A DNA stretch of 64,000 nt from IMGVR_UViG_3300049215_000771:1-64000, one strand, 5' to 3'; positions 29,701 through 60,660 are shown, counted from the first letter of the stretch. The notes: generated by a model not told the origin, from the sequence alone. A program made the numbers and translations.

Positions 29701-30159
29701 ATGCGAAGAAAGAAACAACCTGAGAAACCCAAGCGGCCCAAGCAGGAAAAGCGCTGGCTCTCGCTATCGAAGCTGGAGGGTGTGCGTTGGATATGGGCTG
29801 ACAATTGGTGGGATTGGGTGTTGTCGGGGGTTGTCGAATATCAAGGCAAGCGGTACTATGCTGTTTGTGTTGATGAAAACTACGACAAGCGGTACAAGTG
29901 GTTCCGGCGCTATCTGATGGTAGATTTGCCGGAAGATGTGTGGAAAGACGAACTGGAGAGGCACGCTTTCTTTGTTGAGAAGGTTGGCAGTCACTTCGAG
30001 TTTGACGTAGAGCGTCAATGTCGGAAAGGCCCGGAGAAGTACCTGAAAGATTCTCGGACCTGGCATGAGTTCTACGAAAGGTATCCCAGCCCGACGCAGG
30101 GCGGGGAAGTGCGGGACTACAAGCAATACCCGCACATTGGCTGGTTTGAGAACGACTAA
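29701..30159 (+). CDS. hypothetical protein
   Basis: 152 aa aromatic-rich ORF. Confidence 0.6.
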   Translation: MRRKKQPEKPKRPKQEKRWLSLSKLEGVRWIWADNWWDWVLSGVVEYQGKRYYAVCVDENYDKRYKWFRRYLMVDLPEDVWKDELERHAFFVEKVGSHFEFDVERQCRKGPEKYLKDSRTWHEFYERYPSPTQGGEVRDYKQYPHIGWFEND

Positions 30160-31063
30160 CCTGGAGGATAGGTATGCGCCGCCTAGCTACGAGTTCGTGT
30201 CGTCTCGTTTCGAGAAGTTCGGGTTCCCGCTCGTAATTGACGAAACGATCATTCCCGACGACGACACGACGTTGTTTGTTTGCAGTGGGATGCAAAGGCT
30301 CAGGAACAAGTTTCTGACGCCGGATGGAAGCAAGCACGGCTCTCTACAGTCGTGCATTAGGACCAACGATCTGGAGTTGGTCGGCGATGGATCGCACCTT
30401 ACATATTTTCAAATGCTTGGTAATTTCTCATTTGGTGGGGATTACGAGCAGTCAGTTGAGCTATGGCACAATCTGCTCACTGATCTTCAGATCAAAATCG
30501 AACCAGTTCACTGTCATCCTGACAATCCTGGGCACCACCAGTTGTGGCGCAAGCGGGGATATGATACAGTTGACGATGTGTCGTGCGTCTGGAGTGACGG
30601 CCAGATTGGGGGCTACTGCTGCGAGGTTTATAGCCGGGGGTTGGAGATTGGCAATCTTGTCAATACCCTTGGGCATTCGACGGACGTGGGGTTTGGCTGG
30701 GAAAGGTTGTTCCTCATTGTCGAGGGCAAGGAGAGGGTCGATCAAACCTCCTTGTTCCTCAATCATCACCCAATTGTGGCGGATCACGCCCGGACGCTGG
30801 AAATCCTGTGGAAAAACAACGTAGTTCCTGGTACAAAGCATAGGAACTATGTTTGCCGCAGGCTCCTGCGGAGGATGCTGCGATACCTGAACGGCACAGA
30901 GAAATTCGTCTTTGACGAATGGCTCTCCCAGGAAAGAACGCAGCTAGAGCGTCGTGTCCGAGAGGCGAGAAAAATATGGCACAGGTACAAGCACCAGCCA
31001 TCCGAGTGGTGGTGGACGACCTGTGGTATATTGCCTGAAGAAGTTCCACTACTAGGGAGATGA
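30146..31063 (+). CDS. alaS: alanyl-tRNA synthetase, catalytic core only
   Basis: DTTLFVCSGMQ...QSCIRTNDLELVG...FQMLGNFSFG...DVGFGWERL...ADHAR...YVCRRLLRR; no editing or C-Ala domain. Confidence 0.85.
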   Translation: MRTTNLEDRYAPPSYEFVSSRFEKFGFPLVIDETIIPDDDTTLFVCSGMQRLRNKFLTPDGSKHGSLQSCIRTNDLELVGDGSHLTYFQMLGNFSFGGDYEQSVELWHNLLTDLQIKIEPVHCHPDNPGHHQLWRKRGYDTVDDVSCVWSDGQIGGYCCEVYSRGLEIGNLVNTLGHSTDVGFGWERLFLIVEGKERVDQTSLFLNHHPIVADHARTLEILWKNNVVPGTKHRNYVCRRLLRRMLRYLNGTEKFVFDEWLSQERTQLERRVREARKIWHRYKHQPSEWWWTTCGILPEEVPLLGR

Positions 31064-31350
31064 TGATGGATGAACGCACCCCAAAAAAGGAGATGACCAC
31101 TACGGAGGCGGCGAAGGCGAAAGCCCTCGATCAGTTCATTCGGCGTAAGCGTTACGCCGCACAGATTGAGAAGATCGACAACGCCGGCCTTCACGCCGGT
31201 CAGCCGATGTACTTCTACTGTGATACTTGTGGCATTCCCACGGAGGTCTTGCCGGAAGACTACCTGTTCTGCCCCTACAAGATGTGTTCTCAGTGCAAGG
31301 GGATGGAAGAAGAAGGCTGGCTGGAGGAAGCCATCAAGTTGAAGGAATAG
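31060..31350 (+). CDS. Zn-ribbon hypothetical protein
   Basis: IDN..L.AG.PMYFYC..C...C..C. Confidence 0.65.
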   Translation: MMMDERTPKKEMTTTEAAKAKALDQFIRRKRYAAQIEKIDNAGLHAGQPMYFYCDTCGIPTEVLPEDYLFCPYKMCSQCKGMEEEGWLEEAIKLKE

Positions 31351-31373
31351 GGAGCAGTTACCCCGGATGCTGT

Positions 31374-31402
31374 TTTACAAACAAGGGCATCCGGGGTACT
31401 AT
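31374..31402 (+). promoter_or_regulatory. sigma70-type promoter
   Basis: TTTACA-N17-TACTAT. Confidence 0.6.
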
Positions 31403-31433
31403 CCCCTAGCTGGAGGATTCAAGTGAGGTTGAG

Positions 31434-31862
31434 ATGAACAAGATTGAAAGAAAAGACGCCCATGCTTTTTTTGACAGCCTGATTGCTGGGGAGTCGCCTG
31501 AAGAAAAAATCGCCATCCTTCGAGACATCTTGGTGGATGAGTTTTGTTTCAATGGGATGCCAGAAGAAGTTTCTGAATTGGAAGCTGCTGTCTATGCCGT
31601 CATGAGCAGTCCGCAGGGGGCTTCGCAGAAGATTCAACAGATCAAGTTGGTTCGGGAAAAAACCGGCCTGGGCTTGAAGGAAGCGAAGGAATTCGTCGAA
31701 TCTTTGACGCCAGGGCATCCTTACTACGGCCAGAAGCAGTACCGTCAAATTGATCGGTTGTTGCCGACCCCGCAGGATTACACGGATACGGCGCTGGTGA
31801 ACCGGCTCAACAAGATCGCCAGGGCGTACAACAGGCCGGGAATCTGCTTTACAAACGCCTGA
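31434..31862 (+). CDS. ribosomal L7/L12 C-terminal-domain protein
   Basis: KIQQIKLVREKTGLGLKEAKEFVE. Confidence 0.75.
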   Translation: MNKIERKDAHAFFDSLIAGESPEEKIAILRDILVDEFCFNGMPEEVSELEAAVYAVMSSPQGASQKIQQIKLVREKTGLGLKEAKEFVESLTPGHPYYGQKQYRQIDRLLPTPQDYTDTALVNRLNKIARAYNRPGICFTNA

Positions 31863-31876
31863 TGTCGTAGTAGAAT
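31848..31876 (+). promoter_or_regulatory. sigma70-type promoter (tRNA-Gly/Ro60 unit)
   Basis: TTTACA-N17-TAGAAT. Confidence 0.65.
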
Positions 31877-31903: not shown

Positions 31904-31974
31904 GCGGGTATGATGTAGCGGCAGCCTGTCACGTTCCCAACGTGAATGTGGGGGTTCGACTCCCCCTACCCGCT
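31904..31974 (+). tRNA. tRNA-Gly(CCC)
   Basis: TCACG-TTCCCAA-CGTGA. Confidence 0.88.
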
Positions 31975-32077
31975 CTCAAGTAAGTTGTTGGGATGTTCCC
32001 ACGTTCGCCCAAACCGTCGTTGTAGGCGGCAAGGTCGTGGTGGTTGCAGGACTCCCAAATGAAAGGTAGGTGATACG

Positions 32078-33943
32078 ATGGCAAACAAGAATCTGTTCAG
32101 CAAGCCGGGCGCACAGGGCCAGCATGTCGGTAGCGTTCCGAACGCCGACACCAAGAACGAGGCTGGCGGCAAGGCTTATTCCATGTCGAACGAGGCTGCC
32201 CTGGCGCAGTTCGTGGCGACTTCGTGCCTCAACGGTACGTTCCACACGTCGGCCAAGGATCAGCTTGATACCGTCAAGAAGCTGCTCGCCGGCTGCACCC
32301 CGGAGTTCATCGGCAAGGTTGCCATCTACGGTCGCCAGAGCGCCTTCATGAAGGATTTGCCGGCATTGTGCATCAGCCATCTGGCTGCCGACAACGGTGG
32401 CGGCAAGAACGCTGGTGATCCGTCCCGTCGTTCCGCCCCGTCGTGGACGGGTGGTCCGACCACGCCTGAGCAGGAGGCGAAGCAGGAAGTTCTCAACAAG
32501 GTTTTCCCGCACGTCATTGATTCTGGCACGATGGTCCGTAACTTCGTGCAGATGATCCGTTCCGGCGTGCTGGGCCGCAAGTCGCTGGGCTACAGCCTCC
32601 GTCACCTGGTTCGCCAGTGGTTCGAGAACCGCAGCCCGGCTACGATCTTCCACAACAGCATCGGCAACAACCCGACGCTGGGCGAAGTGATCCGTATCGC
32701 CCGTCCGAAGCCGAACACCCCGGAGAAGGCGGCTTTGTTCGCCTACCTGACGGGGGCGAAGGTCGTTGATGACGCCGAGGGGAAGGTACTCCGTACCTAC
32801 TTCAAGGACGACAGCGACGGCCAGGTGAAGGTTGCCTACGAACACCCGTTCGCCAACCTGCCGCAGATCGTGCAGCAGTTCGAGGCGTGGAAGGCGGACC
32901 AGACGCTTCCTCAGCCGAAGCTGAACTTCCGTTTCCTGGACGGCATCAAGAAGCTGTCTACTGCCGAGTGGACGGAAATCGCTCGGAACGCCAACTGGTT
33001 GACCACGTTGAAGTCCATGAACACCTACAAGGAGCATGGCGTATTCGATCAGCCTGGTATGGTGGAACTGATCTCGGCTCGGCTGGCTGACGCCAACGAA
33101 GTCGCCAAGGTCCGGGTTTTCCCGTACCAGATTCTCATCGCCTACCTTGCCTCCGAGGGCAAGGCTCCGCAGAAGGTCCGTGATGCTTTGCACGACGCAC
33201 TGGAAGCTGCTACTCGCAACGTGCCGGTGTTGACGGGCAAGGTCTACATCTGTGTGGACGTGTCGGGTTCGATGACGACGGGTCGGGTTACGGGCGACCG
33301 TGGCTCGGCGACGACGGCGGCTCGTTGTATCGACGTGGCGGCGCTGTACGCAGCCTCGCTGCTTCGTGTCAACAAGAGCGCCGAAGTCATTCCGTTCGAG
33401 GTAGGTGTCGTCCTGCCGAGCAAGCTGACGTTGGAACCACGGGACACCGTGATGACCAACGCCCGCAAGCTGGCGTCCATCGGCGGCGGTGGTACGAACT
33501 GTTCGGCTCCGCTGAACATGCTCAACCAGCGCAACGCCAAGGGCGATGTCGTTGTCTTCGTCAGCGACTACGAGTCGTGGGCCGATGGTCCGAACGCTCA
33601 CAACGGCAAGGCTACGGCCATGCTGGAGCAGTGGGCCATCTTCAAGAAGCGCAACCCGGACGCCAAGCTGGTTTGCATCGACTTGACGCCTCGTGCCAAC
33701 CACCAGGTTGTCGAGCGCCCGGACATCCTCCAGGTTGGCGGTTTCTCCGACAACGTGTTCAACGTCGTGGCTCGGTTCGCCGAGAGCGGCTGGGACAAGA
33801 ACTTCTGGCTCCAGGAGATCAACAAGATCGACCTGGACGCCTTGGGCGACCTGTGTGGCTCGAAGGCGAAGAAGCAAGATGCAGTGCAGGTTGAAGTCAC
33901 CGAGGCTGTCGGCGGTGATGAAGAGTCCGAAGAACAGCAGTAA
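32078..33943 (+). CDS. Ro60/Rsr TROVE + vWA domain RNA-binding protein
   Basis: NEAGG.AY...LAQ...FPYQ.L.AY...VDVSGSM...GGGGTNCSAPL...VSD.ESW...GGFSD.VF. Confidence 0.93.
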   Translation: MANKNLFSKPGAQGQHVGSVPNADTKNEAGGKAYSMSNEAALAQFVATSCLNGTFHTSAKDQLDTVKKLLAGCTPEFIGKVAIYGRQSAFMKDLPALCISHLAADNGGGKNAGDPSRRSAPSWTGGPTTPEQEAKQEVLNKVFPHVIDSGTMVRNFVQMIRSGVLGRKSLGYSLRHLVRQWFENRSPATIFHNSIGNNPTLGEVIRIARPKPNTPEKAALFAYLTGAKVVDDAEGKVLRTYFKDDSDGQVKVAYEHPFANLPQIVQQFEAWKADQTLPQPKLNFRFLDGIKKLSTAEWTEIARNANWLTTLKSMNTYKEHGVFDQPGMVELISARLADANEVAKVRVFPYQILIAYLASEGKAPQKVRDALHDALEAATRNVPVLTGKVYICVDVSGSMTTGRVTGDRGSATTAARCIDVAALYAASLLRVNKSAEVIPFEVGVVLPSKLTLEPRDTVMTNARKLASIGGGGTNCSAPLNMLNQRNAKGDVVVFVSDYESWADGPNAHNGKATAMLEQWAIFKKRNPDAKLVCIDLTPRANHQVVERPDILQVGGFSDNVFNVVARFAESGWDKNFWLQEINKIDLDALGDLCGSKAKKQDAVQVEVTEAVGGDEESEEQQ

Positions 33944-34773: not shown

Positions 34774-34888
34774 CGGTAGCACAACGGTCCTCTGAAAAGG
34801 GATAGTCTCGACACTATTTGTCCTTCGGGAATGCCGTTGGGATTACATTCATAATCCGTGTGTCCTGGTTCGAGTCCAGGCGAGGCGA
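34759..34888 (+). ncRNA. tRNA-scaffolded Y-RNA-like chimera, copy 5
   Basis: GCCTCG/CGAGGC acceptor, D and T arms; AGTCTCGAC-ACTATTTG-TCC-TTCG-GGA-ATGCC-GTTGGGA-TTACAT; residual TTCATAA-TCCGT. Confidence 0.75.
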
Positions 34889-37028: not shown

Positions 37029-39797
37029 ATGGGCACTCACAAAGACACACTGCTTCTCCCTCAGACCACACTCCCGATCAAGGCCGACTTGCCGGCCAAC
37101 GAGCCAGCAGTCTACAAAGCGTGGAATGAAAGCGACCTGATCCGGCGTATGCGCCGGGACGGGGACAATCCTTTCATCCTCCACGACGGCCCACCTTACG
37201 CCAATGGCGACATCCATATCGGTCATGCTCTCAACAAAATCTTGAAGGATTTTGCCGTCAAGGTCCAATACTTCAACGGGCGAGGCGTTGAGTTCGTGCC
37301 GGGTTGGGACTGCCACGGTTTGCCAATCGAACAGAAGGCTCGTCAACTCCACCCGGAGAGTCGAGACGAGTACGGCCTGCGGCAGATGTGCCGGCAGTAC
37401 GCCTCTCAACAGATCGACATCCAGCGTGAACAATTCAAAGCCCTGGGCGTCATCGCCGATTGGGAGCATCCATACACGACAATGGATCGTTCCTTCGAGT
37501 CGATGGTCTACAATCGACTTTGTGAACTTCTCGGCAAGGAGATGTTGATTCAGGGCAAGAAGCCCGTTTTCTGGTCCTGGGCCGAGCAAACGGCGCTGGC
37601 TGAGGCGGAAGTCGAGTACAAGGATCGCACCGATCCTTCGATCTATGTTGTGTTCCCGACTCAGGAAGCAACTTTTCCTGGTGGTTTTTTGGTGTGGACA
37701 ACTACGCCCTGGACTTTGCCTGCTAACGTCGCTGTTGCCCTGCACCCGGACCTGGATTATGTTCCTGTCAAGTTCAAGGACTATCCCTGGCCGCTCGTGG
37801 TCGCCGAAAATCTGGTGGAAGAACTGGCTGCCAAGGGCATCGTTGAAGGGAAACATTGGGTCAGCAAGTACAAAGGCAAAGACTTCTTGGGTTGGAAGCT
37901 GAAGCATCCGATCAATGGAACTGTGTCTGTCGTCATCAACGCCGACTTCGTGAAGGCTGACACTGGCACAGGTTGCGTCCATATCGCCCCTGGGCACGGC
38001 GAAGATGATTATTTCGTCGCCAGAAGCTACGGTCTGCCACTCGTTATGCCTGTTGGTCCAGATGGTAAGTACACCGAGGGCAAGTACGCCGGCCATTTCG
38101 TTTTCGACGCCAACAAGCAAATCCCCGAAGATTTGAAGACCAAGGGTTTGTTGCTTCATGAAGAAAAAATCACGCACAGCTACCCGCATTGCTGGCGTTC
38201 GGATACTCCGGTCATCTACCGGGCCACGCCACAATTGTTCCTGGATTTGAGCAAGATTCGGGAGTCCGTGTTGAAGGAATTCGCAGCCGTCGAGTTCCTG
38301 CCCGAAGCGTCGAAGAATCGCATGAAGCCGATGCTTGAATCCAGGCCCGACTGGTGCCTCAGTCGCCAGCGTATGTGGGGAGTTCCTATCGCTTTCGTTC
38401 GCAACAAGGAACAGGGCGTTTTTTCCTCTCATCCCGATGTGGTGAGATATACGCAGCGCATGTTGCAAGAAGAAGGCATTGACGTGTGGTGTCGGAAAAT
38501 GGTTGAAGAATGCCAACCGCCTTCTTGGTATGGGGCTATGTTCGTTGGTCTGACCAGCCAATACTTCGAGAAATGCACCGACATCTTAGATGTCTGGTTC
38601 GATAGCGGCCTCACCTGGAACACCCTCAACGGTCGCCAGGCGGACGTTTACCTGGAAGGGAACGATCAACACCGTGGTTGGTTCCAAAGCAGCTTGTGGC
38701 TGTCGGTGGCGCTGACGGGGAAGGCTCCGTACAAGAAGGTCATCACACATGGATTCGTCGTTGACCAAAACGGCGAGAAAATGTCGAAGCGGAAGGGGAA
38801 CGTCGTTGATCCGAACGACGTGGTGAGGAAGTACGGCGCTGAAGTTCTCCGCTATTGGGCGGCGTCCATCGACTACACGAAGGACATGACCTGTGGCGAA
38901 GACATCATGAAGCGTTGTGCCGAGGGACACAAGAAGCTGAGGAATACTTTCAGATTCCTCATCGCCAACATGATCGAGCCTGCCGGCGATATGGAGGGAC
39001 AGTACCTTCCGGTGGATCGGTGGATTCTCGACAAGGCGTGCCAGGTGTTCACGGAGGTTCACGATGCCTTCGAGAAATACGAATACTACAAGGGTCTGCA
39101 CAAGTTGACGGAGTTTGTCAACACGGACCTGAACGCCATCTATTTCAACGCCGTGAAGGATCGTTTGTACTGTGACGGCAAGAACAGTTTCGTGAGAAAC
39201 AGTGCCAACGTGACGATGATTTTACTGGCTGAGGGTTTGTTGAGTCTCGTGGCCCCGTTGTTTACCTACACGGCTCATGAAGTGTTCCAACATGCCCCTG
39301 ATTTCTTCAAGCTGGGACGCAAGGACATCTTCGATGTGACGTATGTTCAACCCGTACCGCTGCCCAAGTACGACTTCGTTGAATATCTGGACGAGGAATA
39401 CTGGAAGGCAGCTTTGAACGCTTTCCATGTCGAGTTCGACAAACTCAAGGCAGCGGGCCAGGTGAGAGACACGCTGGAAGTCAATATCGAACTCAAGGCA
39501 GGGGCGAGTCACCATTTCTTTGCCAAGGCCGAGGATTGGTTTGTGGTTTCTGACGTAACCGGAATGCCTACGGATGGCGAGCCGTTGGCTGAGTTTATGG
39601 CAATGGGTGATACTTACCGCATCGTCCGGGCTAGACAGGGAAAGTGTGACCGTTGCTGGAAGCGCAAGGCAGAAGGCAACTTGTGTCTACGGTGTCGCAA
39701 AGTATTGGAGGAAACCTGGACTTCGGCCTGCAAGGTCAAGTCTGATTTACAACCAGACCAGAACGTGGTAGAATCCTCCCCGGAGAAACAAACATGA
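37029..39797 (+). CDS. ileS: isoleucyl-tRNA synthetase
   Basis: HDGPPYANG.IHIGH, GWDCHGLPIE, WTTTPWTLP, DQHRGWFQS, KMSK, C-terminal CDRCW Zn finger. Confidence 0.97.
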   Translation: MGTHKDTLLLPQTTLPIKADLPANEPAVYKAWNESDLIRRMRRDGDNPFILHDGPPYANGDIHIGHALNKILKDFAVKVQYFNGRGVEFVPGWDCHGLPIEQKARQLHPESRDEYGLRQMCRQYASQQIDIQREQFKALGVIADWEHPYTTMDRSFESMVYNRLCELLGKEMLIQGKKPVFWSWAEQTALAEAEVEYKDRTDPSIYVVFPTQEATFPGGFLVWTTTPWTLPANVAVALHPDLDYVPVKFKDYPWPLVVAENLVEELAAKGIVEGKHWVSKYKGKDFLGWKLKHPINGTVSVVINADFVKADTGTGCVHIAPGHGEDDYFVARSYGLPLVMPVGPDGKYTEGKYAGHFVFDANKQIPEDLKTKGLLLHEEKITHSYPHCWRSDTPVIYRATPQLFLDLSKIRESVLKEFAAVEFLPEASKNRMKPMLESRPDWCLSRQRMWGVPIAFVRNKEQGVFSSHPDVVRYTQRMLQEEGIDVWCRKMVEECQPPSWYGAMFVGLTSQYFEKCTDILDVWFDSGLTWNTLNGRQADVYLEGNDQHRGWFQSSLWLSVALTGKAPYKKVITHGFVVDQNGEKMSKRKGNVVDPNDVVRKYGAEVLRYWAASIDYTKDMTCGEDIMKRCAEGHKKLRNTFRFLIANMIEPAGDMEGQYLPVDRWILDKACQVFTEVHDAFEKYEYYKGLHKLTEFVNTDLNAIYFNAVKDRLYCDGKNSFVRNSANVTMILLAEGLLSLVAPLFTYTAHEVFQHAPDFFKLGRKDIFDVTYVQPVPLPKYDFVEYLDEEYWKAALNAFHVEFDKLKAAGQVRDTLEVNIELKAGASHHFFAKAEDWFVVSDVTGMPTDGEPLAEFMAMGDTYRIVRARQGKCDRCWKRKAEGNLCLRCRKVLEETWTSACKVKSDLQPDQNVVESSPEKQT
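39746..39774 (+). promoter_or_regulatory. sigma70-type promoter
   Basis: TTTACA-N17-TAGAAT. Confidence 0.6.
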
Positions 39798-46194: not shown

Positions 46195-46697
46195 TCGAGA
46201 AGATCATCTCTGGCGGTCAGACCGGAGCCGATCAAGCTGGCCTACGGGCAGCTAAAGCGGTTGGCCTCGCTACGGGTGGATGGCTCCCCCAAGGGTGTAT
46301 TACTTTGGACGGGCCACGCCCGGACCTGTTGGAAATTTATTCCATGCAGGAACACCCCAAGAAGGGTTATCCAGCCCGTACCGAGGCCAACGTCAGAGAC
46401 TCAGACGGCACAATCCGCTTCGCCGAGAAGTTTGGCTCGCCCGGCGAAAAATGCACCCTCAAGGCCATCCATTGGTTCAGGAAGCCCTATTTGGATATTC
46501 CCATTCTCGCTATGTACAACGGCAAGGAGTGGGTTGCCAAAGCCATTGGTTATTCTCCCGCCGATGTTCTGGCCTGGGTGAAAGAAAACAACATCCGTGT
46601 ACTCAACGTCGCCGGCAACAGCGAACAAACCTGCAAAGGTATCGGCGACGTTGTACACGACTTCCTCGTGAAAGTATTCGGGGTGACGCATGATTGA
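46191..46697 (+). CDS. SLOG-family (putative molybdenum-carrier/YpsA-like) protein
   Basis: KIISGGQTGADQAGL...RTEANVRDSDGT...LNVAG. Confidence 0.85.
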   Translation: MIEKIISGGQTGADQAGLRAAKAVGLATGGWLPQGCITLDGPRPDLLEIYSMQEHPKKGYPARTEANVRDSDGTIRFAEKFGSPGEKCTLKAIHWFRKPYLDIPILAMYNGKEWVAKAIGYSPADVLAWVKENNIRVLNVAGNSEQTCKGIGDVVHDFLVKVFGVTHD

Positions 46698-47694
46698 TTT
46701 CGAGCGTGGGTCCAAGGTGACGGGATCGAAGTTCTACTTCCTCACGGGCGATGAAGCACTCATGGAGTGGAACCTCATCAACTTCATGCTGGCCTATCAT
46801 CAGCGCAACGGCTGGAATTTTGTCATTCCTCCGTACCTCATCAACAAAAACACCGGCACCCAGGCTGGCATCTTGCCTCGCTTCGAGGGCGACTACTACC
46901 AGACCCAGGAAGGGCTGATGCTGATTCCTACCGCTGAAACGCCGCTGGTGGGGATGCACAGCGATGAAATCTTCAAGGAAGAAGACTTGCCCATCAAGTA
47001 CGTCGCCTTCTCGCCGTGTTTTCGCAAAGAAGCCGGCAGCTACGGAGCGAAGGACAAGGGCTACAAGCGGGTTCATCAGTTTCACAAGATTGAACTTTTC
47101 GCTATCACGACGCCTGACCAGTCGGGCATCATGCAGGAGCGTATGGTTTTCGAGATCGGCGAGATGCTGACCGGAATGGGCGTCAACTGGCGCTCGGTGG
47201 AACTGCCGCCCGAAGAACGCAGCCCGGTGTCGAATAAAACCATTGACTTGGAAGTGAAAGTCGGCGATGATTGGTTGGAGGTTTCGTCGATTTCCAACAC
47301 AGGCGACAACCAAAGCAAACCGGCACAGATTCGCTACAAGCCGAAGAACGGCGGCAAGAACATCAAATGTCACTTGCTCAATGGGTCTGGCGTGGCTTTG
47401 CCCCGGCTGATGTTGGCGTTGGCGGATCGTGCCGACGTGTGGGCTAATCCGTTTCCGCCTTTGAAGGCTTTCGCCAAGCGCCCGCTGACGGTTGCCAACC
47501 TTGCAGTGGCTCTACGCTGTAAGCCTGACGACATCATTGCCCGCCTGAAGCATTATTGTGCCCATCCCGACGCCAAGTTGTGGGACGCCATCATTACTCC
47601 TAGCACGGTGGTCGATCCTGAGATGGCCCGGCTGCTCGCAAGGGAGAATGGTTATGGACTTGAAATTGAGGACAAGGAGCGACCCACGGAATAA
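46690..47694 (+). CDS. serS: seryl-tRNA synthetase catalytic core lacking the N-terminal arm, with IF2_N-like C-terminal domain
   Basis: LIPTAE.P, FRKEAGSYG, RVHQF.KIE, EVSSISN, H.LNGSG.A.PR. Confidence 0.88.
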   Translation: MIDFERGSKVTGSKFYFLTGDEALMEWNLINFMLAYHQRNGWNFVIPPYLINKNTGTQAGILPRFEGDYYQTQEGLMLIPTAETPLVGMHSDEIFKEEDLPIKYVAFSPCFRKEAGSYGAKDKGYKRVHQFHKIELFAITTPDQSGIMQERMVFEIGEMLTGMGVNWRSVELPPEERSPVSNKTIDLEVKVGDDWLEVSSISNTGDNQSKPAQIRYKPKNGGKNIKCHLLNGSGVALPRLMLALADRADVWANPFPPLKAFAKRPLTVANLAVALRCKPDDIIARLKHYCAHPDAKLWDAIITPSTVVDPEMARLLARENGYGLEIEDKERPTE

Positions 47695-49110: not shown

Positions 49111-50442
49111 ATGTCTGACCCTATCCGAACCAGGTTTGCTCCGAGTCCGACTGGCTTCCTGCATATCGGCGGGGTCCGCACGGCCTTGTACAACTGGCTT
49201 TTGGCCCGCAAGATGGGCGGCAAGTTCGTTCTGAGGATCGACGATACCGACACGGGGCGCAATGTTCAAGAAGCCCTCCAGCCCATTCTTGATGGCTTCA
49301 AGTGGCTCGGCCTGAATTGGGACGAAGGACCGGAAGTGGACGGACCCTATGGCCCGTACTACCAGTCCCAGCGAACCAAGATTTATCAGGGCTACTTTGC
49401 CATTCTCCAGTCACGCAACGAAGTGTACCAGGACAAGGGCGCTTGGCGTTTGAAGATGCAGACTGGCGATCAACAACTCATGATCGACGACCTGGTTCGG
49501 GGACGTGTGACCTGGGATGTGAAGAATTTGACGCACCGAGGCGATCCGGTGATCGTCCGCAGCGATGGTACGTTTCTCTACAACTTCGCTACGGTTTGTG
49601 ACGATCACGACATGAAGATCACTCATGTCCTTCGTGCCGAGGAACATCTTTCCAACACACCAGTTCAATTGAAGATTTACGAGGCGTTGGGCATGAAGCC
49701 GCCGTTGTTCGGACATCTTCCTTTCGTGTGTTCCCCTGGCTCCAAGAAGAAACTGAGCAAGCGTGATGCAGTGCCGGTGACGGTCGAATACTACAAAAAT
49801 GTCGGTTATACACAGTCCGGCATTCTCAACTACTTGGCGTTGCTGGGTTGGTCGCTGGACGACCGCACTGAGTTGTTCACCCTTCAGGAGTTGATTGACG
49901 GTTTTTCCATCAAGGGCATCCACAACGCCCCGGCCAGCTTCGACCCGAAGAAGATGCTGCATATCAATGCCGAGCATATGAAGCTGTTGCCCAATGTCAA
50001 AGTGGATCGCTGTGCCGATCACCTTCGGTCGCTGGGTATCGAGCCGGATATGGAGATGGTTAAGAAGGTCGTGGAGGCGTGTGGCGACCGTATCAAGACG
50101 TTCAACGATATTTCGGGTTATGGTATTTTCTTCTTTCGTGACCCGGAGTATAACGAGGAAGCATTCCAGAAGCGACTTGGCGGGGAGCATTTTGATCCCG
50201 CCTACAAGTTCGTGTTGGGCATCAAGGAAGTCACGCCGTTCGATTCCAAGACCTTGGAAGCAAAACTCCATGAGTATTGTGAACAGAACGGCCTGAAGGT
50301 GGGCGATATGGTTCACGCCATTCGCATCGCCATCACCGGCCAACCTATTGGGCCGGGTGTGTTTGACTGCCTCTCTATCCTTGGGCCAGACGAATCGGTA
50401 CGCCGGTTCAATATGGCCTGGAGGAAGAAACGAGGCTTGTAA
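49111..50442 (+). CDS. gltX: glutamyl-tRNA synthetase
   Basis: RFAPSPTGFLHIGG, LRIDDTD, KLSKR, anticodon-binding domain; short acceptor-binding insertion. Confidence 0.95.
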   Translation: MSDPIRTRFAPSPTGFLHIGGVRTALYNWLLARKMGGKFVLRIDDTDTGRNVQEALQPILDGFKWLGLNWDEGPEVDGPYGPYYQSQRTKIYQGYFAILQSRNEVYQDKGAWRLKMQTGDQQLMIDDLVRGRVTWDVKNLTHRGDPVIVRSDGTFLYNFATVCDDHDMKITHVLRAEEHLSNTPVQLKIYEALGMKPPLFGHLPFVCSPGSKKKLSKRDAVPVTVEYYKNVGYTQSGILNYLALLGWSLDDRTELFTLQELIDGFSIKGIHNAPASFDPKKMLHINAEHMKLLPNVKVDRCADHLRSLGIEPDMEMVKKVVEACGDRIKTFNDISGYGIFFFRDPEYNEEAFQKRLGGEHFDPAYKFVLGIKEVTPFDSKTLEAKLHEYCEQNGLKVGDMVHAIRIAITGQPIGPGVFDCLSILGPDESVRRFNMAWRKKRGL

Positions 50443-53252: not shown

Positions 53253-55010
53253 ATGAACAAGGAAATCTACAAGCCAGACCTGTTTGACTGGCATGAAGGC
53301 AAGCAGACCTTCTATATCACCACTGCCATTGACTACCCGAATGCCAAACCACACATCGGTACGGCCTTCGAGAAGATCGGTGCAGACATCCAGGCTCGCT
53401 TCTGGCGATTCCTGGGCCATGAAGTCTTCTTCCTCATGGGGAACGATGAGAACACCGTCAAAGTGTTGAAGGCTGCACAAACCGATGGTTACTCCAGTTA
53501 CAAGGAGATGACCATCAAAGCCTACGCCGACCGCATGGCCGAGGAGTTCAAGGAAGTCTGGCGGGCGCTGGATATTTCCAACGACGATTTTATCCAGACC
53601 AGCGAGCAACGCCACAAGATTGGCGTGCAGCACTTCATTCAGACCGTGTATGACGCCGGTTTCATCTACAAGAAGCCTTACGCCGGCTGGTACTGTGAGG
53701 GGTGTGAGGAATTCAAGCTGGAGAAGAACCTTCAGGACGTGGCCGGTCACAAAATCTGCCCGAACCACCCACTGTCGCTGGTGTGGCGTGAGGAGGAGAA
53801 CTACTTCTTCAAATTGTCGGCGTTCAAACAGTGGATTCTGGATTTGTACGTTCCGGCTTTCGACTCGCCCTACACCGAGGTTCTTCCCGCAGCCCGGCTC
53901 AACGAAATGGAGAATTTCGTCAAGGGTGAACTGGATGATATTTCCATCAGTCGCAAGAACGAAGGCTGGGGCATTCCGGTTCCCTGGGACGAATCCCAGG
54001 TCATCTACGTTTGGTTCGACGCCTTGTTGAACTACCTGACTGGCATTGGTTTCCCCGACCCCAAGTTCCAGAAGTGGTGGCCGGCACGGTGTCACGTCAT
54101 CGGCAAGGACATCACCCGCTTCCACTGTGCCTTGTGGCCGGCAATGATCCATGCCTACAACCAGAAGGCCACGGTGAAGCTGTGTGCCCCGGAGAAGGTG
54201 TTCGCACACGGTTTCATCTACCAGAAGAAGGGGGATGAGGCTATCAAGGTGTCGAAAAGCGGCACCAGCATCAACCCGATGGACCTGGTTGAGAAGTACG
54301 GCAGCGATGCCTACAGGTACTACTTCATGTCGAAGTGTTCCTTCGCCCACGACGGCGAGTACAGCTTGCAGCACTTCAATGAAGTCTACAATGCTGAACT
54401 GGCGAACAACCTGGGCAATCTTGCCAGTCGGGTCGGGAATATGGTCCTCAAGAATCTGGAGGGCATCATTCCGAGCAAGGAGGCGATTGAGAAAACGGGC
54501 AACTTGACGGACGTTGGCTACAACTTCTTCACCATCGAAAGCCTCAACGAGTGGGTGAAGGCGACGGAAGCCTTTGACTATCGCCGTGGCCTGGGTATCG
54601 TGTGGGAAATTCTCATCCGTGCCAACAGGTACTTCGACGATAGGAAGCCCTGGACCTTGGCCCGGAAGAAGGGTGAGCCGCTGGACCAGGATAAGGTGAT
54701 CCAGCTTGCTTCTACCCTTCGCAACACTGTTGCCATGATTCGGTGTGTGGCGATTTTGCTGAAACCTTATCTCCCCAGGGCATCGGAAAAGTTGTATAAT
54801 ACCTACGACTGGCCGGTGAAATGGGAAGACCTGAGCTACAATCATCTCCTGGAGATCGTCAAGGAGAACGATTGTGGGTCGAGGGACGAGTTCCGGCTGA
54901 ATCCGACTGCACTGGTGAAGGATGAAAACAACAAAACAGGCGACATCCATTTCCTCAAGTACCCAGCCTTGTTCCCCAGGGTTGAACTTAAAAAAGATGA
55001 GGCAGTCTAA
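53253..55010 (+). CDS. metG: methionyl-tRNA synthetase
   Basis: FYITTAIDYPN..PHIG, YVWFDALLNY, IGKDI.RFH, KVSKS, LAN.LGNL. Confidence 0.95.
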   Translation: MNKEIYKPDLFDWHEGKQTFYITTAIDYPNAKPHIGTAFEKIGADIQARFWRFLGHEVFFLMGNDENTVKVLKAAQTDGYSSYKEMTIKAYADRMAEEFKEVWRALDISNDDFIQTSEQRHKIGVQHFIQTVYDAGFIYKKPYAGWYCEGCEEFKLEKNLQDVAGHKICPNHPLSLVWREEENYFFKLSAFKQWILDLYVPAFDSPYTEVLPAARLNEMENFVKGELDDISISRKNEGWGIPVPWDESQVIYVWFDALLNYLTGIGFPDPKFQKWWPARCHVIGKDITRFHCALWPAMIHAYNQKATVKLCAPEKVFAHGFIYQKKGDEAIKVSKSGTSINPMDLVEKYGSDAYRYYFMSKCSFAHDGEYSLQHFNEVYNAELANNLGNLASRVGNMVLKNLEGIIPSKEAIEKTGNLTDVGYNFFTIESLNEWVKATEAFDYRRGLGIVWEILIRANRYFDDRKPWTLARKKGEPLDQDKVIQLASTLRNTVAMIRCVAILLKPYLPRASEKLYNTYDWPVKWEDLSYNHLLEIVKENDCGSRDEFRLNPTALVKDENNKTGDIHFLKYPALFPRVELKKDEAV

Positions 55011-55503: not shown

Positions 55504-55585
55504 GGGGTTATAGCTTAATGGAAGAGTGGCGAGGTAAGGCCCAAGTGGTCCCTCGCAGGTAGGGGTTCGACTCCCCTTAGCTCCA
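55504..55585 (+). ncRNA. tRNA-like RNA with enlarged anticodon loop
   Basis: GGGGTTA/TAGCTCC (Ala-like G3:U70), AGGGG-TTCGACT-CCCCT; GCGAGG..CCTCGC encloses 16 nt. Confidence 0.6.
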
Positions 55586-55660
55586 CTGAATGAAAGGCAT
55601 CCTGATACTTCTGATTCTCTCCCTAATCATCGCCATCACCGCAATCCTGACGAGGAAAAA

Positions 55661-58696: not shown

Positions 58697-58725
58697 TTTA
58701 CAAATCTGTGTTTTCGTGGTATCAT
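58697..58725 (+). promoter_or_regulatory. sigma70-type promoter
   Basis: TTTACA-N17-TATCAT. Confidence 0.65.
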
Positions 58726-58750
58726 TCCGTTGAATACACACGGAGATACC

Positions 58751-59185
58751 ATGCCTACCAAACAAGTAATCGTGTGGCGGCAAGACCTGCAAAACGTCCC
58801 GAAGGGCAAATTCGGGGCGCAGATGGGTCATGCTGCCCATTTGTTCCTCACGGAGCAAGTCCGGGCCGAGTACGGCGGTAAGGGGCCGAAACTCCGTGCT
58901 GGCGAATCTGGCCGGGTTGAAATCCGTCTGACTCAGGCCGAGATGGATTGGATTCTTGGCAACTACCGCAAGGTGGTGGCCTGGGTCCGTTCCGAAGAAG
59001 ATTTGATGACGGTTTACAACAAGGCCAAGGAACTCGGTCTGCCCGTGCATCTCGTCACCGACGATGGGTTGACGGTTTTCGACAAACCCACGAAGACTTG
59101 TATTTCCATCGGTCCTGCCGAGGAATCGGAAGTGGACAAGGTGACGGGAGAGGCCGGGCCTCTTGGAAAGTTGAAGTTGCTATGA
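58751..59185 (+). CDS. pth2: peptidyl-tRNA hydrolase, Pth2 family
   Basis: KQVIV.R.DL...KGK..AQ.GHA...KVV...V.D.G.T....T.T...IGP....VDKVTG...L.LL. Confidence 0.9.
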   Translation: MPTKQVIVWRQDLQNVPKGKFGAQMGHAAHLFLTEQVRAEYGGKGPKLRAGESGRVEIRLTQAEMDWILGNYRKVVAWVRSEEDLMTVYNKAKELGLPVHLVTDDGLTVFDKPTKTCISIGPAEESEVDKVTGEAGPLGKLKLL

Positions 59186-59526
59186 GCCAGGATTTTCTCT
59201 GGACATTCTTCAACCAACTCCCCATTGGGGCGAAGTTCAAGATGTCCGATGATCCCCAGCCGGTGTACGAGAAGCGCAGCGAGTACCAGGCGTGGCGGCG
59301 GACGGACCCTTGGGGATTGGGACAGCCCGGCAAGACCATGATGGTTCTTGACGGGCATGTTGAAGTGATGCCCGTCGATGTCGCCGAATGTTACTGGTGT
59401 GGTGGCGAATTCGCCATGATCGACCTGGTGTATATTCCAAGGAAGGGTGACAATCCCGACGCCGAGCCTCGCCGATTCATGTGTGCCGATTGTGATTTAG
59501 GCGATGCAGATGAAAGCAAACCATGA
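59182..59526 (+). CDS. hypothetical protein with C-terminal Zn finger
   Basis: CYWC...CADC. Confidence 0.55.
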   Translation: MSQDFLWTFFNQLPIGAKFKMSDDPQPVYEKRSEYQAWRRTDPWGLGQPGKTMMVLDGHVEVMPVDVAECYWCGGEFAMIDLVYIPRKGDNPDAEPRRFMCADCDLGDADESKP

Positions 59527-60050
59527 TTCCGGTCTTTGTTACCGACAAACACGCCCCACAAACCAGCCCTTGTTATTTCTGCTACACTGGCTCATCTGGC
59601 GTGGCAGAAGCCTTCAAGTCCTGGGATGATGGTCTGGCGAGATTTGTTGCCGATATTCTTCGGGAAGGCCCGGAGGCCAAACCGACGCATCAGATATGCA
59701 GAAGTTGCTATGAAGCCGGCAAACATCGCCAGCGTAGTCGATGCCAGAACTGTGGGAAATTAGCAAGCCTGCTGCGAACGGCCAACGATTCGATGACGAA
59801 TACTTGGGCGGATATTGGCCCGGACCATGTTATCTTGTGTGAAGTATGCCAGAAGGTGTACTACGACACGGACAAGCGACAATGGACGTTCAAATATGAC
59901 GGCGGCGGCAAGCTGATAATACCGTATACGAGCAAGGTTCCGCTGACGGACGAAGACATTCTCCTGCTTAGACGGCTATGGCGGGAGTACCCGGACTGGA
60001 AAACCAGGAACAAGATGCCGACATTGCACCGGAGGATCGACGATGATTAG
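59523..60050 (+). CDS. Cys-rich protein with RSIDD-type tag
   Basis: Several CxxC; ends LHRRIDDD*. Confidence 0.6.
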   Translation: MIPVFVTDKHAPQTSPCYFCYTGSSGVAEAFKSWDDGLARFVADILREGPEAKPTHQICRSCYEAGKHRQRSRCQNCGKLASLLRTANDSMTNTWADIGPDHVILCEVCQKVYYDTDKRQWTFKYDGGGKLIIPYTSKVPLTDEDILLLRRLWREYPDWKTRNKMPTLHRRIDDD

Positions 60051-60660
60051 GGGCACCAGACACTTATTCGGTGCAGAGGCTCGATTATTTCACGAAATAA
60101 CGAGCGAGTTGCGTAGAATAACTATACAGGAAGGCTACCAGGAGTTCATCCCCTCCGCACTGTGCGAGGTGGAAGTCTTCACAGGGAAGGCGGGGCCGGA
60201 AATCCTGGGTCAGATGTACACGTTCAAGGACAAGAAGGAACGTGAAATATGCCTTGTGCCAGAGATAACTGCTGTGGTACAAAGTATATATACTGCCGAC
60301 TGGTCCAAGTATCTCCCCAGGCCGGTGAAAGTGTTCTACCTGGCCCGATGTTACAGGTACGAGCGGCCACAGGAAGGTCGCTATAGGGAGTTCTGGCAGT
60401 TCGGTGTTGAGAACTTGGGCGGCAAGACATCCAAGGAAGAGATGATTGATCTGCTCAGGAAGTCTTTGGAGGCGTGTGGCATCGAGTTTGTCATCAACGA
60501 TGGCGTCAAACGAGGGCTGAATTACTACGTTGAAGATGGCTTCGAGGCTGAAGTGGCAGCACTTGGCGCTCAGAAGCAAGTGGCCGGTGGAGGCCGGTAT
60601 AGTGAAGGCATCGGATGGGCCATTGGAGTTGATAGGCTGATGCTGGCGAAACAAAAATGA
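60043..60660 (+). CDS. hisS: histidyl-tRNA synthetase-like catalytic core (no anticodon-binding domain)
   Basis: RGT, MYTFKD, L.PE.TA, YRYERPQ.GRYREF.QFGVE, RGLNYY, GGGRY, GWAIGVDRL. Confidence 0.85.
   Translation: MIRGTRHLFGAEARLFHEITSELRRITIQEGYQEFIPSALCEVEVFTGKAGPEILGQMYTFKDKKEREICLVPEITAVVQSIYTADWSKYLPRPVKVFYLARCYRYERPQEGRYREFWQFGVENLGGKTSKEEMIDLLRKSLEACGIEFVINDGVKRGLNYYVEDGFEAEVAALGAQKQVAGGGRYSEGIGWAIGVDRLMLAKQK

What the first reader, a model, noticed from the sequence alone, without database searches (positions are those of the whole stretch)
30146..60660. All three class II synthetases are minimal cores while the class I enzymes are near full length
Seen: AlaRS ~305 aa (no editing or C-Ala domain), SerRS 334 aa, HisRS 205 aa (no anticodon-binding domain), versus IleRS 922, MetRS 585 and GluRS ~443 aa. 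Established: Ala, Ser and His identity rests largely outside the anticodon. Inference: anticodon-blind enzymes could charge cleaved tRNAs or the anticodon-less tRNA-like RNAs here (55504-55585 has the Ala G3:U70 pair), or act on non-tRNA acceptors.
Basis: partly seen in the sequence, partly recalled or inferred. Interest (0 to 1): 0.62.

Follow-up and report, generated by a model that had tools for sequence, protein, structure and literature searches.

The report
Miniature class II tRNA synthetases, huge phage
A 533-kb phage carries intact but drastically shortened alanyl-, seryl- and histidyl-tRNA synthetase genes, each from a large length-conserved family, which are candidates for the smallest natural synthetases; the suggested contrast between synthetase classes disappears once the whole genome is examined.

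Summary
The three short class II genes are real. They are an AlaRS-like gene at 30146-31063 (305 aa), a SerRS-like gene at 46690-47694 (334 aa) and a HisRS-like gene at 60043-60660 (205 aa). None is a fragment. Each belongs to a large metagenomic family of conserved length, with medians of about 292, 252 and 209 aa, and the catalytic motifs are invariant.

The mini-HisRS clade is monophyletic. It has two clean deletions, the insertion domain and the anticodon-binding domain. In relatives it often sits next to tRNA-His genes with G-1:C73.

The mini-AlaRS is not a simple truncation. It is a compacted version of the whole aminoacylation domain and ends just after the second G3:U70-contact element.

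Most mini-SerRS relatives are bare 250-aa cores without the tRNA-binding arm. This copy adds a rare C-terminal domain that resembles IF2_N.

The contrast between class II and class I comes from looking only at this window. Elsewhere the same 533-kb genome encodes full-length class II LysRS and AspRS. It also encodes a class I ValRS that has lost its CP1 editing domain.

A better rule is that the anticodon-reading domain is lost only in HisRS, where the anticodon is a weak identity element, while editing domains and elbow- or arm-binding modules are shed.

My best reading is streamlined enzymes that read the acceptor stem. This is least certain for SerRS. No activity has been shown.

The parts
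30146..31063 (+). Mini AlaRS-like gene, 305 aa (332 aa if read from ATG 30065). It has a catalytic core plus a compacted tRNA-recognition helical domain. There is no editing domain and no C-Ala domain.
   Evidence: NCBIfam alaS gives E 3.8e-27 and 94.9 bits against a cut-off of 457. The AF2 model has pLDDT 92.9. VIA-align gives Z about 27, with 297 residues aligned to AlaRS fragments spanning chain residues 1 to 403-418. It is collinear with bacterial AlaRS apart from internal deletions. The family has 396 relatives with a median of about 292 aa.
46690..47427 (+). Mini SerRS-like catalytic core, residues 1-246. The N-terminal coiled-coil tRNA-binding arm and the first ~45 residues of the globular domain are absent.
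   Evidence: serS profile positions 151-397 of 418 are matched at 252.6 bits against a cut-off of 301.65. The match to PDB 2dq3 covers residues 151-398 at E 7e-53. The best 120 relatives have a median length of 252 aa, with motif 2, motif 3 and the serine-site residues invariant. No SerRS arm is encoded anywhere in the genome.
47428..47694 (+). An 88-aa C-terminal extension of this SerRS copy, forming a small alpha/beta domain that resembles IF2_N.
   Evidence: Among the best 120 relatives it is shared only with P0242, at 45% identity. The Atlas structure search places residues 261-329 on IF2_N-containing clusters at TM 0.53-0.58. It matches no NCBIfam family.
60043..60660 (+). Mini HisRS-like gene, 205 aa. 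It is a class II core with motifs 1-3 and both histidine-binding motifs. The insertion domain and the anticodon-binding domain are absent.
   Evidence: hisS gives 157 bits against a cut-off of 286.75, compared with 88 bits for hisZ. The alignment to T. thermophilus HisRS covers residues 8-158 and 242-315. There are 1515 relatives; the best 120 listed have a median of 209 aa. The clade is monophyletic with support 0.997 and shows two clean deletions. The homodimer prediction scores 0.88 against a best control of 0.00.
37029..39797 (+). IleRS, 922 aa, full length with its CP1 editing domain.
   Evidence: TIGR00392 scores 805 bits against a cut-off of 621, with a contiguous match to profile positions 3-805 of 861.
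49111..50442 (+). GluRS, 443 aa from ATG 49111. About 50 profile positions (95-145) are missing.
   Evidence: TIGR00464 scores 398 bits against a cut-off of 290, in two stretches. The start codon was checked.
53253..55010 (+). MetRS, 585 aa, with a complete core.
   Evidence: TIGR00398 scores 399 bits against a cut-off of 336, matching profile positions 1-510 of 530.
7990..8064 (+). tRNA-Ala(UGC) with G3:U70 and A73. Two more tRNA-Ala genes, at 9681-9753 (GGC) and 10473-10544 (CGC), have the same acceptor stem.
   Evidence: ARAGORN and Rfam both call them. The sequences were read.
55504..55586 (+). tRNA-like RNA with an Ala-type acceptor stem (G3:U70, A73). Its anticodon arm is extended and ends in a 5-nt loop.
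   Evidence: Rfam tRNA scores 49.1 bits. ARAGORN cannot assign an anticodon. The fold is shown.

Best explanation
The three genes encode streamlined but catalytically competent class II synthetase cores. Huge phages keep them as accessory translation genes, alongside large tRNA arrays and about a dozen other synthetases.

Each enzyme activates its amino acid with an intact class II active site. It most likely transfers the amino acid to tRNA by reading acceptor-end identity elements only: G-1:C73 for His and G3:U70 for Ala.

The modules shed are those a phage can do without during a short infection. These are editing domains, elbow- or arm-binding domains, and for HisRS the weakly used anticodon-binding domain.

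Shown here:
- Conservation of length and catalytic residues.
- The AlaRS fold, and a confident HisRS fold within the dimer prediction.
- Monophyly of the mini-HisRS clade.
- A predicted HisRS dimer through motif 1.
- Retention in the mini-AlaRS of a compact tRNA-recognition domain that reaches both G3:U70-contact positions.
- tRNA-His genes next to the mini-HisRS in relatives.

Inferred:
- Actual aminoacylation.
- The identity of the tRNA substrates. This genome has no tRNA-His gene, so the substrate there would be the host's.
- How the arm-less SerRS finds tRNA-Ser. Possibilities are the IF2_N-like add-on in this copy, a trans factor, or a heterodimer with host SerRS.
For: 1. Conserved families.
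- Mini-HisRS: 1515 hits at E<=1e-5; the best 120 listed are about 200-215 aa at 54-84% identity.
- Mini-AlaRS: 396 hits, about 257-320 aa.
- Mini-SerRS: the best 120 are about 245-260 aa.

2. Invariant catalytic positions.
- HisRS: the motif 2 loop, an RGL.YY motif, GGGRY, and the motif 3 Arg.
- AlaRS: R72, the MLGNFSFG block, and D180 with G182 and G184.
- SerRS: R112 and E114, the TAE motif, E197/S199/S200/S202/N203, and R239.

3. Mini-HisRS evolution. The clade separates from 81 full-length HisRS with support 0.997 and has two block deletions of 104 and 101 columns.

4. Mini-HisRS context. A tRNA-His(GTG) lies within 3 kb in phage Phosso and in 5 of 7 IMG/VR relatives, directly adjacent in three. 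Of the eight such genes (two in L009), six have G at -1 and C73.

5. Mini-HisRS homodimer. The score is 0.88 against a best control of 0.00, a mark reached by 20 of 30 proteins solved as pairs of one chain and 1 of 23 solved as single chains. Runs agree in at least 97% of contacts and pLDDT is at least 86. The interface is residues 1-17 and 33-42.

6. Mini-AlaRS structure. It aligns over 297 residues to AlaRS aminoacylation fragments up to chain residue about 403-418. It ends about 10 residues after the element that aligns with YDTYGFP. A helical tRNA-recognition domain would be unnecessary for adenylate synthesis alone.

7. Precedent. The 461-aa Tupanvirus mini-AlaRS lacks the Asn and Asp readers yet charges tRNA-Ala and microhelices in a G3:U70-specific way (PMC10036535).

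8. Cognate tRNAs. Three tRNA-Ala with G3:U70 and A73, and at least four tRNA-Ser, are in the genome.

9. Genome-wide pattern. The pattern of domain retention fits the location of identity elements.
Against: - No activity data exist.
- None of the three reaches its NCBIfam equivalog cut-off.
- From memory, not checked here: deleting the arm of E. coli SerRS nearly abolishes tRNA charging, N-terminal E. coli AlaRS fragments shorter than about 461 residues make adenylate but charge poorly, and the isolated E. coli HisRS catalytic domain is a weak, less specific enzyme.
- This genome encodes no tRNA-His.
- A 58%-identical mini-AlaRS sits in an ordinary bacterial chromosome context, where it would be a paralogue of the housekeeping enzyme. 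That fits a non-canonical role as well as it fits this one.
- The homodimer pass may reflect the model's memory of solved HisRS dimers.
Confidence: 0.55

Rival explanations
1. The proteins are synthetase-like paralogues that make an aminoacyl-adenylate and pass the amino acid to something other than tRNA, such as a carrier protein, a small molecule or a protein. Alternatively they act as amino-acid sensors. Precedents are HisZ, AsnA, EpmA/PoxA and the SerRS-like amino acid:carrier-protein ligases.
For: - The classical tRNA-binding modules are missing, and no substitute is encoded elsewhere in the genome.
- All three score below the equivalog cut-offs.
- A mini-AlaRS relative lies among ordinary bacterial genes, and NCBI names another relative only 'alanine--tRNA ligase-related protein'.
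- No conserved tRNA-related partner gene flanks the mini-HisRS.
Against: - The HisRS motif 2 loop, which reads the acceptor end, is invariant.
- tRNA-His genes abut the gene in relatives.
- hisS scores above hisZ, and the genome has no hisG.
- The SerRS core is of the bacterial type (253 bits), not the methanogen type from which the carrier-protein ligases derive (about 19-20 bits).
- The mini-AlaRS keeps a tRNA-recognition domain.
- All three sit among tRNA genes and other synthetases.
Confidence: 0.22
2. The mini subunits work as heterodimers with the host's full-length class II enzyme. The host subunit supplies the tRNA-binding arm or anticodon domain, and the phage subunit supplies the active site or poisons it. 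This matters most for SerRS, where tRNA binds across the dimer.
For: - The motif 1 dimer interface is retained and is predicted to be used.
- The mini-SerRS has no arm, and none is encoded in the genome.
- Cross-subunit binding of tRNA-Ser is established for SerRS. This is from memory and was not tested here.
Against: - No heterodimer test was run, because the host is unknown.
- The mini-HisRS is predicted to form homodimers.
- The families are diverse (54-84% identity) and occur across many phages with presumably different hosts, which makes a conserved fit to each host enzyme less likely.
Confidence: 0.12
3. One reading: class II enzymes in particular are minimised so that anticodon-blind cores can charge cleaved tRNAs or the anticodon-less tRNA-like RNAs of this phage.
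For: - Several tRNA-like genes here have extended or interrupted anticodon arms, one with G3:U70.
- Suppressor-type tRNAs exist elsewhere in the genome. The UCA one has a Ser-like acceptor stem and a long variable arm.
- Ala, Ser and His identity lies mainly outside the anticodon (established knowledge).
Against: - Class is not the variable. LysRS and AspRS are full length and ValRS is truncated.
- Host AlaRS and SerRS are equally blind to the anticodon, so minimisation is not needed for this.
- The minis occur in genomes independently of one another.
- No link between the minis and odd tRNAs was tested across genomes.
Confidence: 0.08
4. The genes are decaying fragments or mis-called ORFs of once full-length synthetases.
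For: They are short, and their scores fall below the family cut-offs.
Against: - Hundreds of relatives have the same length and invariant catalytic residues.
- The folds are predicted with confidence: pLDDT 92.9 and 88.1 for the AlaRS-like and SerRS-like models, and at least 86 in the HisRS dimer runs.
- The missing parts are not found in other frames or elsewhere in the genome.
Confidence: 0.02

Closest known systems
Tupanvirus mini-AlaRS (TuAlaRS, 461 aa; PMC10036535)
   Same: [quoted passage not shown] In this protein both aligned positions are Thr, while the family consensus keeps Asn at the first.
   Different: The phage protein is about 155 aa shorter. It has some ten internal deletions and ends about 10 residues after the second contact element. 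It is of bacterial type and comes from a phage rather than a giant virus of amoebae. Its activity is untested.
Canonical bacterial HisRS and its engineered catalytic-domain fragment
   Same: It has the same class II core: motifs 1-3, both histidine-binding motifs and the motif 2 loop. It is predicted to dimerise through motif 1.
   Different: It lacks both the insertion domain of about 100 aa and the C-terminal anticodon-binding domain of about 100 aa. At 205 aa it is about half the normal size and smaller than the engineered fragment.
HisZ (HisRS-like regulatory subunit of ATP phosphoribosyltransferase)
   Same: It is a HisRS paralogue without an anticodon-binding domain.
   Different: HisZ keeps the insertion region and works with the short form of HisG. 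Here hisS scores 157 bits against 88 for hisZ, the catalytic residues are invariant, and the genome has no hisG.
SerRS-like amino acid:carrier-protein ligases and arm-deleted SerRS constructs
   Same: It is a SerRS catalytic core without the N-terminal coiled-coil arm.
   Different: The carrier-protein ligases derive from methanogen-type SerRS. This core is of the bacterial type, scoring 253 bits against about 19-20. No carrier-protein gene was noticed nearby. This copy adds an IF2_N-like domain.
Synthetases of huge phages (Al-Shayeb et al. 2020, PMC7162821)
   Same: Huge phages carry up to 15 synthetases and up to 67 tRNAs. This genome has about 14 synthetase-like genes and 56-66 tRNA calls. 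Two huge-phage genomes of 634-642 kb in the phage collection carry the mini-HisRS, and one also carries the mini-AlaRS.
   Different: In the passages I read, that paper does not describe truncated architectures.
Bacterial GlyRS alpha subunit and PylRS catalytic domain (about 270-300 aa)
   Same: They are naturally small class II cores. GlyRS alpha is the next-best structural match to the mini-AlaRS core, at Z about 16.5.
   Different: GlyRS alpha needs a beta subunit to bind tRNA, and no such partner was found here. The sequences here are clearly of AlaRS, SerRS and HisRS type.

Membership tests
Histidine--tRNA ligase (HisRS) | Class II motifs 1-3 plus the two histidine-binding motifs and the motif 2 loop | tested here: met
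   The alignment to T. thermophilus HisRS is. R105, P109 to Q119, R157 to Y162, G182 to Y186 and R198 are invariant or nearly so in 89 sequences.
Histidine--tRNA ligase (HisRS) | Whole-protein score over the curated equivalog cut-off | tested here: not met
   157.2 bits against 286.75.
Histidine--tRNA ligase (HisRS) | C-terminal anticodon-binding domain and the insertion domain | tested here: not met
   Profile positions 135-230 and 316-406 are unmatched. Blocks of 104 and 101 columns are present only in full-length HisRS. There is no separate copy in the genome other than the ThrRS domain.
Histidine--tRNA ligase (HisRS) | Charges tRNA-His | not testable with these tools
   The only evidence is circumstantial: tRNA-His with G-1:C73 lies next to the gene in relatives.
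HisZ | Partner HisG (short form) present, and a better fit to HisZ than to HisS | tested here: not met
   The genome has no hisG. hisZ scores 87.9 bits against 157.2 for hisS.
Alanine--tRNA ligase (AlaRS) | AlaRS-type catalytic core fold and motifs | tested here: met
   Foldseek E 8e-19 to 1riq, and VIA Z about 27. The invariant core residues are listed.
Alanine--tRNA ligase (AlaRS) | Editing domain and C-Ala domain; score over the equivalog cut-off | tested here: not met
   94.9 bits against 457. Nothing beyond about profile position 312-371 is matched, in the gene or anywhere in the genome.
Alanine--tRNA ligase (AlaRS) | tRNA-recognition domain with the Asn and Asp that read G3:U70 | tested here: inconclusive
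   The helical domain is present in compact form. The position aligned with the PSN Asn is Thr here and Asn in the family consensus. The position aligned with the Asp of YDTYGFP is Thr. The E. coli residue numbers for these positions are from the paper read and from memory.
Natural mini-AlaRS (TuAlaRS type) | Aminoacylation domain only, active on tRNA-Ala and microhelix | tested here: inconclusive
   The architecture is comparable but about 155 aa shorter. Activity cannot be tested, and no phylogeny against TuAlaRS was made.
Serine--tRNA ligase (SerRS) | Bacterial-type catalytic domain with motifs 2 and 3 and the serine-site residues | tested here: met
   E 7e-53 to 2dq3 residues 151-398. The invariant positions are listed.
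Serine--tRNA ligase (SerRS) | N-terminal coiled-coil arm that binds the long variable arm; score over cut-off | tested here: not met
   Profile positions 1-150 are absent from the gene and the genome. The score is 252.6 bits against 301.65.
SerRS-like amino acid:carrier-protein ligases | Descent from methanogen-type SerRS; adjacent carrier-protein gene | tested here: not met
   The methanogen-type models score 19-20 bits against 253 for the bacterial serS model. The flanking ORFs scanned gave no carrier-protein hit, but the neighbourhood was not scanned exhaustively.

The most novel reading that the evidence does not exclude
These are autonomous natural mini-synthetases that read only the acceptor end of tRNA, the 'operational RNA code'. 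The 205-aa HisRS would be the smallest natural aminoacyl-tRNA synthetase known. Because they ignore the anticodon arm, they would also charge the phage's suppressor-type tRNAs and its tRNAs with aberrant anticodon arms. That would give huge phages a charging system that survives host attack on anticodon loops, or that supports reassigned codons.
Probability: 0.25. Interest if true: 0.85.

Novelty: new variant of a known kind. Interest (0 to 1): 0.62.

Why it matters
Synthetases have long been argued to have begun as small catalytic cores that read acceptor-stem minihelices. So far that idea has been tested mainly with engineered fragments and 'urzymes'.

Natural cores kept by selection, of 205, about 250 and about 300 aa, would provide real proteins for testing several questions:
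- how little protein suffices for specific charging;
- whether tRNA recognition can be rebuilt without arm, elbow or anticodon contacts;
- what a phage gains from its own editing-free synthetases.

The cores could also serve as compact scaffolds for engineering orthogonal synthetase and tRNA pairs. One relative is in a cultured system, Sinorhizobium phage Phosso, so the questions can be tested directly.

Tried and rejected
- **Near-identical DNA in GenBank phages.** No match.
- **Missing domains elsewhere in the genome.** I looked for a SerRS arm, an AlaRS editing or C-Ala domain, and a HisRS anticodon domain. None was found.
- **Conserved partner genes next to the mini-HisRS.** None of the flanking ORFs recurs in eight related loci.
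- **ORF upstream of SerRS (46191-46697).** It is not a detached arm. No SerRS arm is detected anywhere in the genome, and by eye the ORF carries a GGQTGADQ-type motif of an unrelated family.
- **Zn-ribbon ORF after AlaRS (31060-31350).** It recurs near the gene in one other huge phage only, which is too little to call it a partner.
- **The three minis as one travelling module.** Rejected. Five related genomes with the mini-HisRS lack the mini-AlaRS and have no mini-SerRS; one has a 36%-identical SerRS in a 411-aa frame and one only a weak match.
- **PHROGs.** There is no family for the mini forms. The phage AlaRS and SerRS profiles there are full length, and the mini-HisRS matches nothing.
- **Scan of species-representative genomes with the mini-AlaRS alignment.** It returned only ordinary full-length AlaRS at 26-31% identity, because the search patterns are common to all AlaRS. 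It says little about bacterial mini copies.
- **Literature.** Four searches found no description of truncated phage synthetases. The library is incomplete, so this is not proof of novelty.
- **Heterodimer prediction with a host SerRS.** Not run. The host is unknown, and conserved class II interfaces would probably pass regardless.
- **Read mapping and sequencing-run tools.** Not used.

Full report
**What the window is.**
The window is the first 64 kb of a 532,729-bp virus record. Its G+C is about 53% and nearly all genes lie on the + strand. ARAGORN finds 38 tRNA genes in the window and 56 in the genome, or 66 if short insertions are allowed. This is a huge phage of the kind described by Al-Shayeb et al. 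2020, which carry up to 67 tRNAs and up to 15 synthetases. No near-identical phage is in GenBank.

**The observation.**
- The AlaRS-like ORF runs 30065-31063. The TTG at 30146 gives 305 aa, and an identical 305-aa protein exists in the protein collection.
- The SerRS-like gene is 46690-47694 (334 aa).
- The HisRS-like gene is 60043-60660 (205 aa).
- IleRS (922 aa), MetRS (585 aa) and GluRS (443 aa from ATG 49111) all exceed their curated cut-offs. None of the three class II genes does.
- GluRS itself lacks about 50 profile positions (95-145), so 'near full length' is approximate.

**They are not fragments.**
- *Mini-HisRS.* It has 1515 relatives at E<=1e-5 within the searchable length range. 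The best 120 are almost all 200-215 aa, at 54-84% identity.
- *Mini-AlaRS.* It has 396 relatives, mostly 257-320 aa.
- *Mini-SerRS.* The best 120 relatives have a median length of 252 aa.
- *Catalytic residues.* In all three families the catalytic motifs are invariant or nearly so.
- *Where the relatives are.* They sit on contigs of up to 669 kb. They also occur in the cultured 469-kb Sinorhizobium phage Phosso (HisRS, 196 aa, annotated as such) and in two huge-phage records of 634-642 kb.

**HisRS.**
The alignment to T. thermophilus HisRS covers residues 8-158 and 242-315. The insertion domain and the whole C-terminal anticodon-binding domain are absent.

An exhaustive search without a length filter shows that the nearest clusters are all about 200-225 aa and match in one continuous stretch. 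Full-length HisRS appear only from rank 15 and match in two stretches.

I built a tree from 27 mini representatives plus the query and 81 full-length HisRS. I left out rows shorter than 190 aa, between 241 and 379 aa, or longer than 480 aa. The tree puts all minis on one side of a split with support 0.997. The alignment shows two block deletions of 104 and 101 columns. This points to one origin followed by diversification.

The motif 2 loop, which in HisRS reads the acceptor end, is invariant.

A homodimer prediction scored 0.88 against a best control of 0.00. That mark was reached by 20 of 30 proteins solved as pairs of one chain and by 1 of 23 proteins solved as single chains. The runs agree in at least 97% of contacts and pLDDT is at least 86. 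The interface uses residues 1-17 and 33-42, the motif 1 region. This supports dimerisation but does not show it, and it may reflect the model's memory of solved HisRS dimers.

In Phosso and in 5 of 7 IMG/VR relatives a tRNA-His(GTG) lies within 3 kb of the gene, directly adjacent in three. Of the eight such genes (two in L009), six have G at -1 opposite C73. This genome itself has no tRNA-His. It also has no hisG, which argues against a HisZ-like role.

**AlaRS.**
The AF2 model is confident, with pLDDT 92.9. It matches AlaRS catalytic fragments with Foldseek E 8e-19 and VIA Z about 27. The alignment covers 297 residues but spans chain residues 1 to about 403-418.

An alignment with 15 bacterial AlaRS sequences shows why. 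The phage protein is collinear with the first ~410 residues and has about ten internal deletions:
- two deletions, of 19 and 13 columns, between motifs 2 and 3;
- one of 19 columns after motif 3;
- two, of 24 and 10 columns, in the helical tRNA-recognition domain.

The protein stops about 10 residues after the element that aligns with the YDTYGFP motif. It is therefore a compacted whole aminoacylation domain rather than a bare core.

The position aligned with the Asn that reads U70 is Thr in this protein and Asn in the family consensus. The position aligned with the Asp that reads G3 is Thr.

The 461-aa Tupanvirus mini-AlaRS also lacks both readers. It still charges tRNA-Ala and microhelices in a G3:U70-dependent way, and its authors call it the only known natural synthetase made of the aminoacylation domain alone.

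The three tRNA-Ala genes in the window all have G3:U70 and A73.

One 58%-identical relative lies in an unmistakably bacterial neighbourhood, with topoisomerase I, NfeD, CvpA and a PAS histidine kinase. The family is therefore not confined to phages. In a cell it would be a paralogue of the housekeeping enzyme.

**SerRS.**
Residues 1-246 match bacterial SerRS from residue about 150 to 398, with all active-site motifs. The coiled-coil arm is absent from the gene and from the genome.

Most relatives stop at about 250 aa. The 88-aa tail of this copy is shared only with P0242 among the best 120. The Atlas structure search places residues 261-329 on IF2_N-containing clusters at TM 0.53-0.58, which is a lead and not a proof.

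How an arm-less SerRS would select tRNA-Ser is the weakest point of the charging hypothesis.

**The class contrast does not hold genome-wide.**

| Enzyme | Class | Size | State |
|---|---|---|---|
| LysRS | II | 517 aa | full length, over cut-off |
| AspRS | II | 554-aa ORF | over cut-off, N-terminal anticodon-binding domain present |
| ThrRS | II | 408 aa | no N-terminal TGS/editing part, anticodon domain kept |
| PheS-like | II | 356-aa frame | below cut-off |
| ValRS-like | I | 507 aa | about 200-aa CP1 editing domain deleted |
| CysRS | I | 439 aa | matches profile positions 1-365 of 466 |
| TyrRS | I | 391-aa frame | over cut-off |
| ArgRS-like | I | 433-aa frame | weak match |

What is lost across the genome:
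- editing domains in Ala, Val and Thr, but not in Ile;
- elbow- or arm-binding modules in Ala and Ser;
- one weakly used anticodon domain, in His.

Anticodon-binding domains persist wherever the anticodon is a main identity element.

The three minis are also independent of one another. Five related genomes with the mini-HisRS lack the mini-AlaRS. One of them has a 36%-identical SerRS in a 411-aa frame.

**Interpretation.**
The most economical reading is that these are streamlined, active synthetases that read the acceptor end of tRNA. I put this at about 0.55 overall. It is more likely for His and Ala and less likely for Ser.

The rivals are:
- paralogues that use a non-tRNA acceptor (0.22);
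- function as heterodimers with host subunits (0.12);
- gene decay (0.02).

The tRNA-like RNA at 55504-55586 does have an Ala-type acceptor stem and no normal anticodon loop. Any AlaRS should accept such a stem, so it does not explain the miniaturisation.

**Novelty.**
I found no paper describing these truncated phage families. PHROGs has no family for them. The library searched is incomplete.

The nearest characterised relative in concept is the Tupanvirus mini-AlaRS. I rate this a new variant of a known kind. Its particular interest is the 205-aa HisRS core, which would be the smallest natural synthetase if it is active.

Noticed in passing
window 13184-13278, 25615-25716, 34759-34888, 55504-55586 (also 4872-4971, 6212-6337, 14780-14905 by ARAGORN with introns allowed): Several tRNA genes carry short insertions (11-48 nt) in or next to the anticodon loop, or have extended anticodon arms. 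Rfam calls the four listed first tRNA, and ARAGORN needs its intron option to type them. 27217-27314, which both tools also flag as long, has a normal UAU anticodon loop with a long two-hairpin variable region.
   Followed up: partly
window 32078-33943 (+): There is a homologue of the RNA-binding protein Rsr/Ro60 (E 1e-22, C-terminal half). It lies between tRNA-Gly 31904-31975 and the 130-nt tRNA-like element at 34759-34888, which might be its RNA partner. This was not tested.
   Followed up: no
genome 80837-80930, 121393-121540, 491736-491826 (outside the window): tRNAs with stop-codon anticodons: UCA at 80837-80930, two CUA in tandem at 121393-121540, and a CUA call at 491736-491826 that ARAGORN retypes as Ser(AGA) when introns are allowed. 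The UCA one has a Ser-like acceptor stem, G73 and a long variable arm. No alternative genetic code was assumed or tested.
   Followed up: partly
genome 459827-460435 (-), outside the window: A free-standing 202-aa protein matches the C-terminal tRNA-binding part of GatB and the YqeY domain (E 1e-18). It lies between the ValRS-like and ThrRS genes and could be a tRNA-binding helper acting in trans.
   Followed up: no
L108 10001-10924 (bacterial MAG contig of 254,566 bp): A 307-aa mini-AlaRS relative (58% identity) sits among ordinary bacterial genes: topA, NfeD, CvpA and a sensor kinase. The same arrangement is seen in an independent Logan contig.
   Followed up: partly
window 61700-62425 (+): An HNH-nuclease-like ORF matches the HNH region of IscB and Cas9 (E 7e-13). 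It is probably a homing-type HNH endonuclease.
   Followed up: no
window 31434-31862 (+) and 56321-57337 (+): A 142-aa ORF has a short match to ribosomal protein L7/L12 (E 4e-8). A separate 338-aa ORF is PurM-like (E 2e-39, below cut-off).
   Followed up: no
window 39993-41549 (+): A 518-aa ORF has a weak match to a phosphopantothenate--cysteine ligase-like domain (E 1.5e-7) and matches phrog_35624, of unknown function.
   Followed up: no
PHROGs family phrog_4806: A 190-position phage family annotated 'histidyl tRNA synthetase' is matched weakly by the SerRS core and not at all by the mini-HisRS. It may be a further small class II-like phage family.
   Followed up: no
window 31060-31350 (+); L025 4622-4822: The 96-aa four-cysteine ORF that overlaps the AlaRS stop codon has a 44%-identical counterpart about 700 bp downstream of the mini-AlaRS in a 669-kb phage contig. 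It is absent from the other contexts examined.
   Followed up: partly
L012 3001-3619: In one related 252-kb contig the mini-HisRS matches as two overlapping pieces (query residues 1-73 and 48-205). This suggests a frameshift or a local duplication.
   Followed up: no
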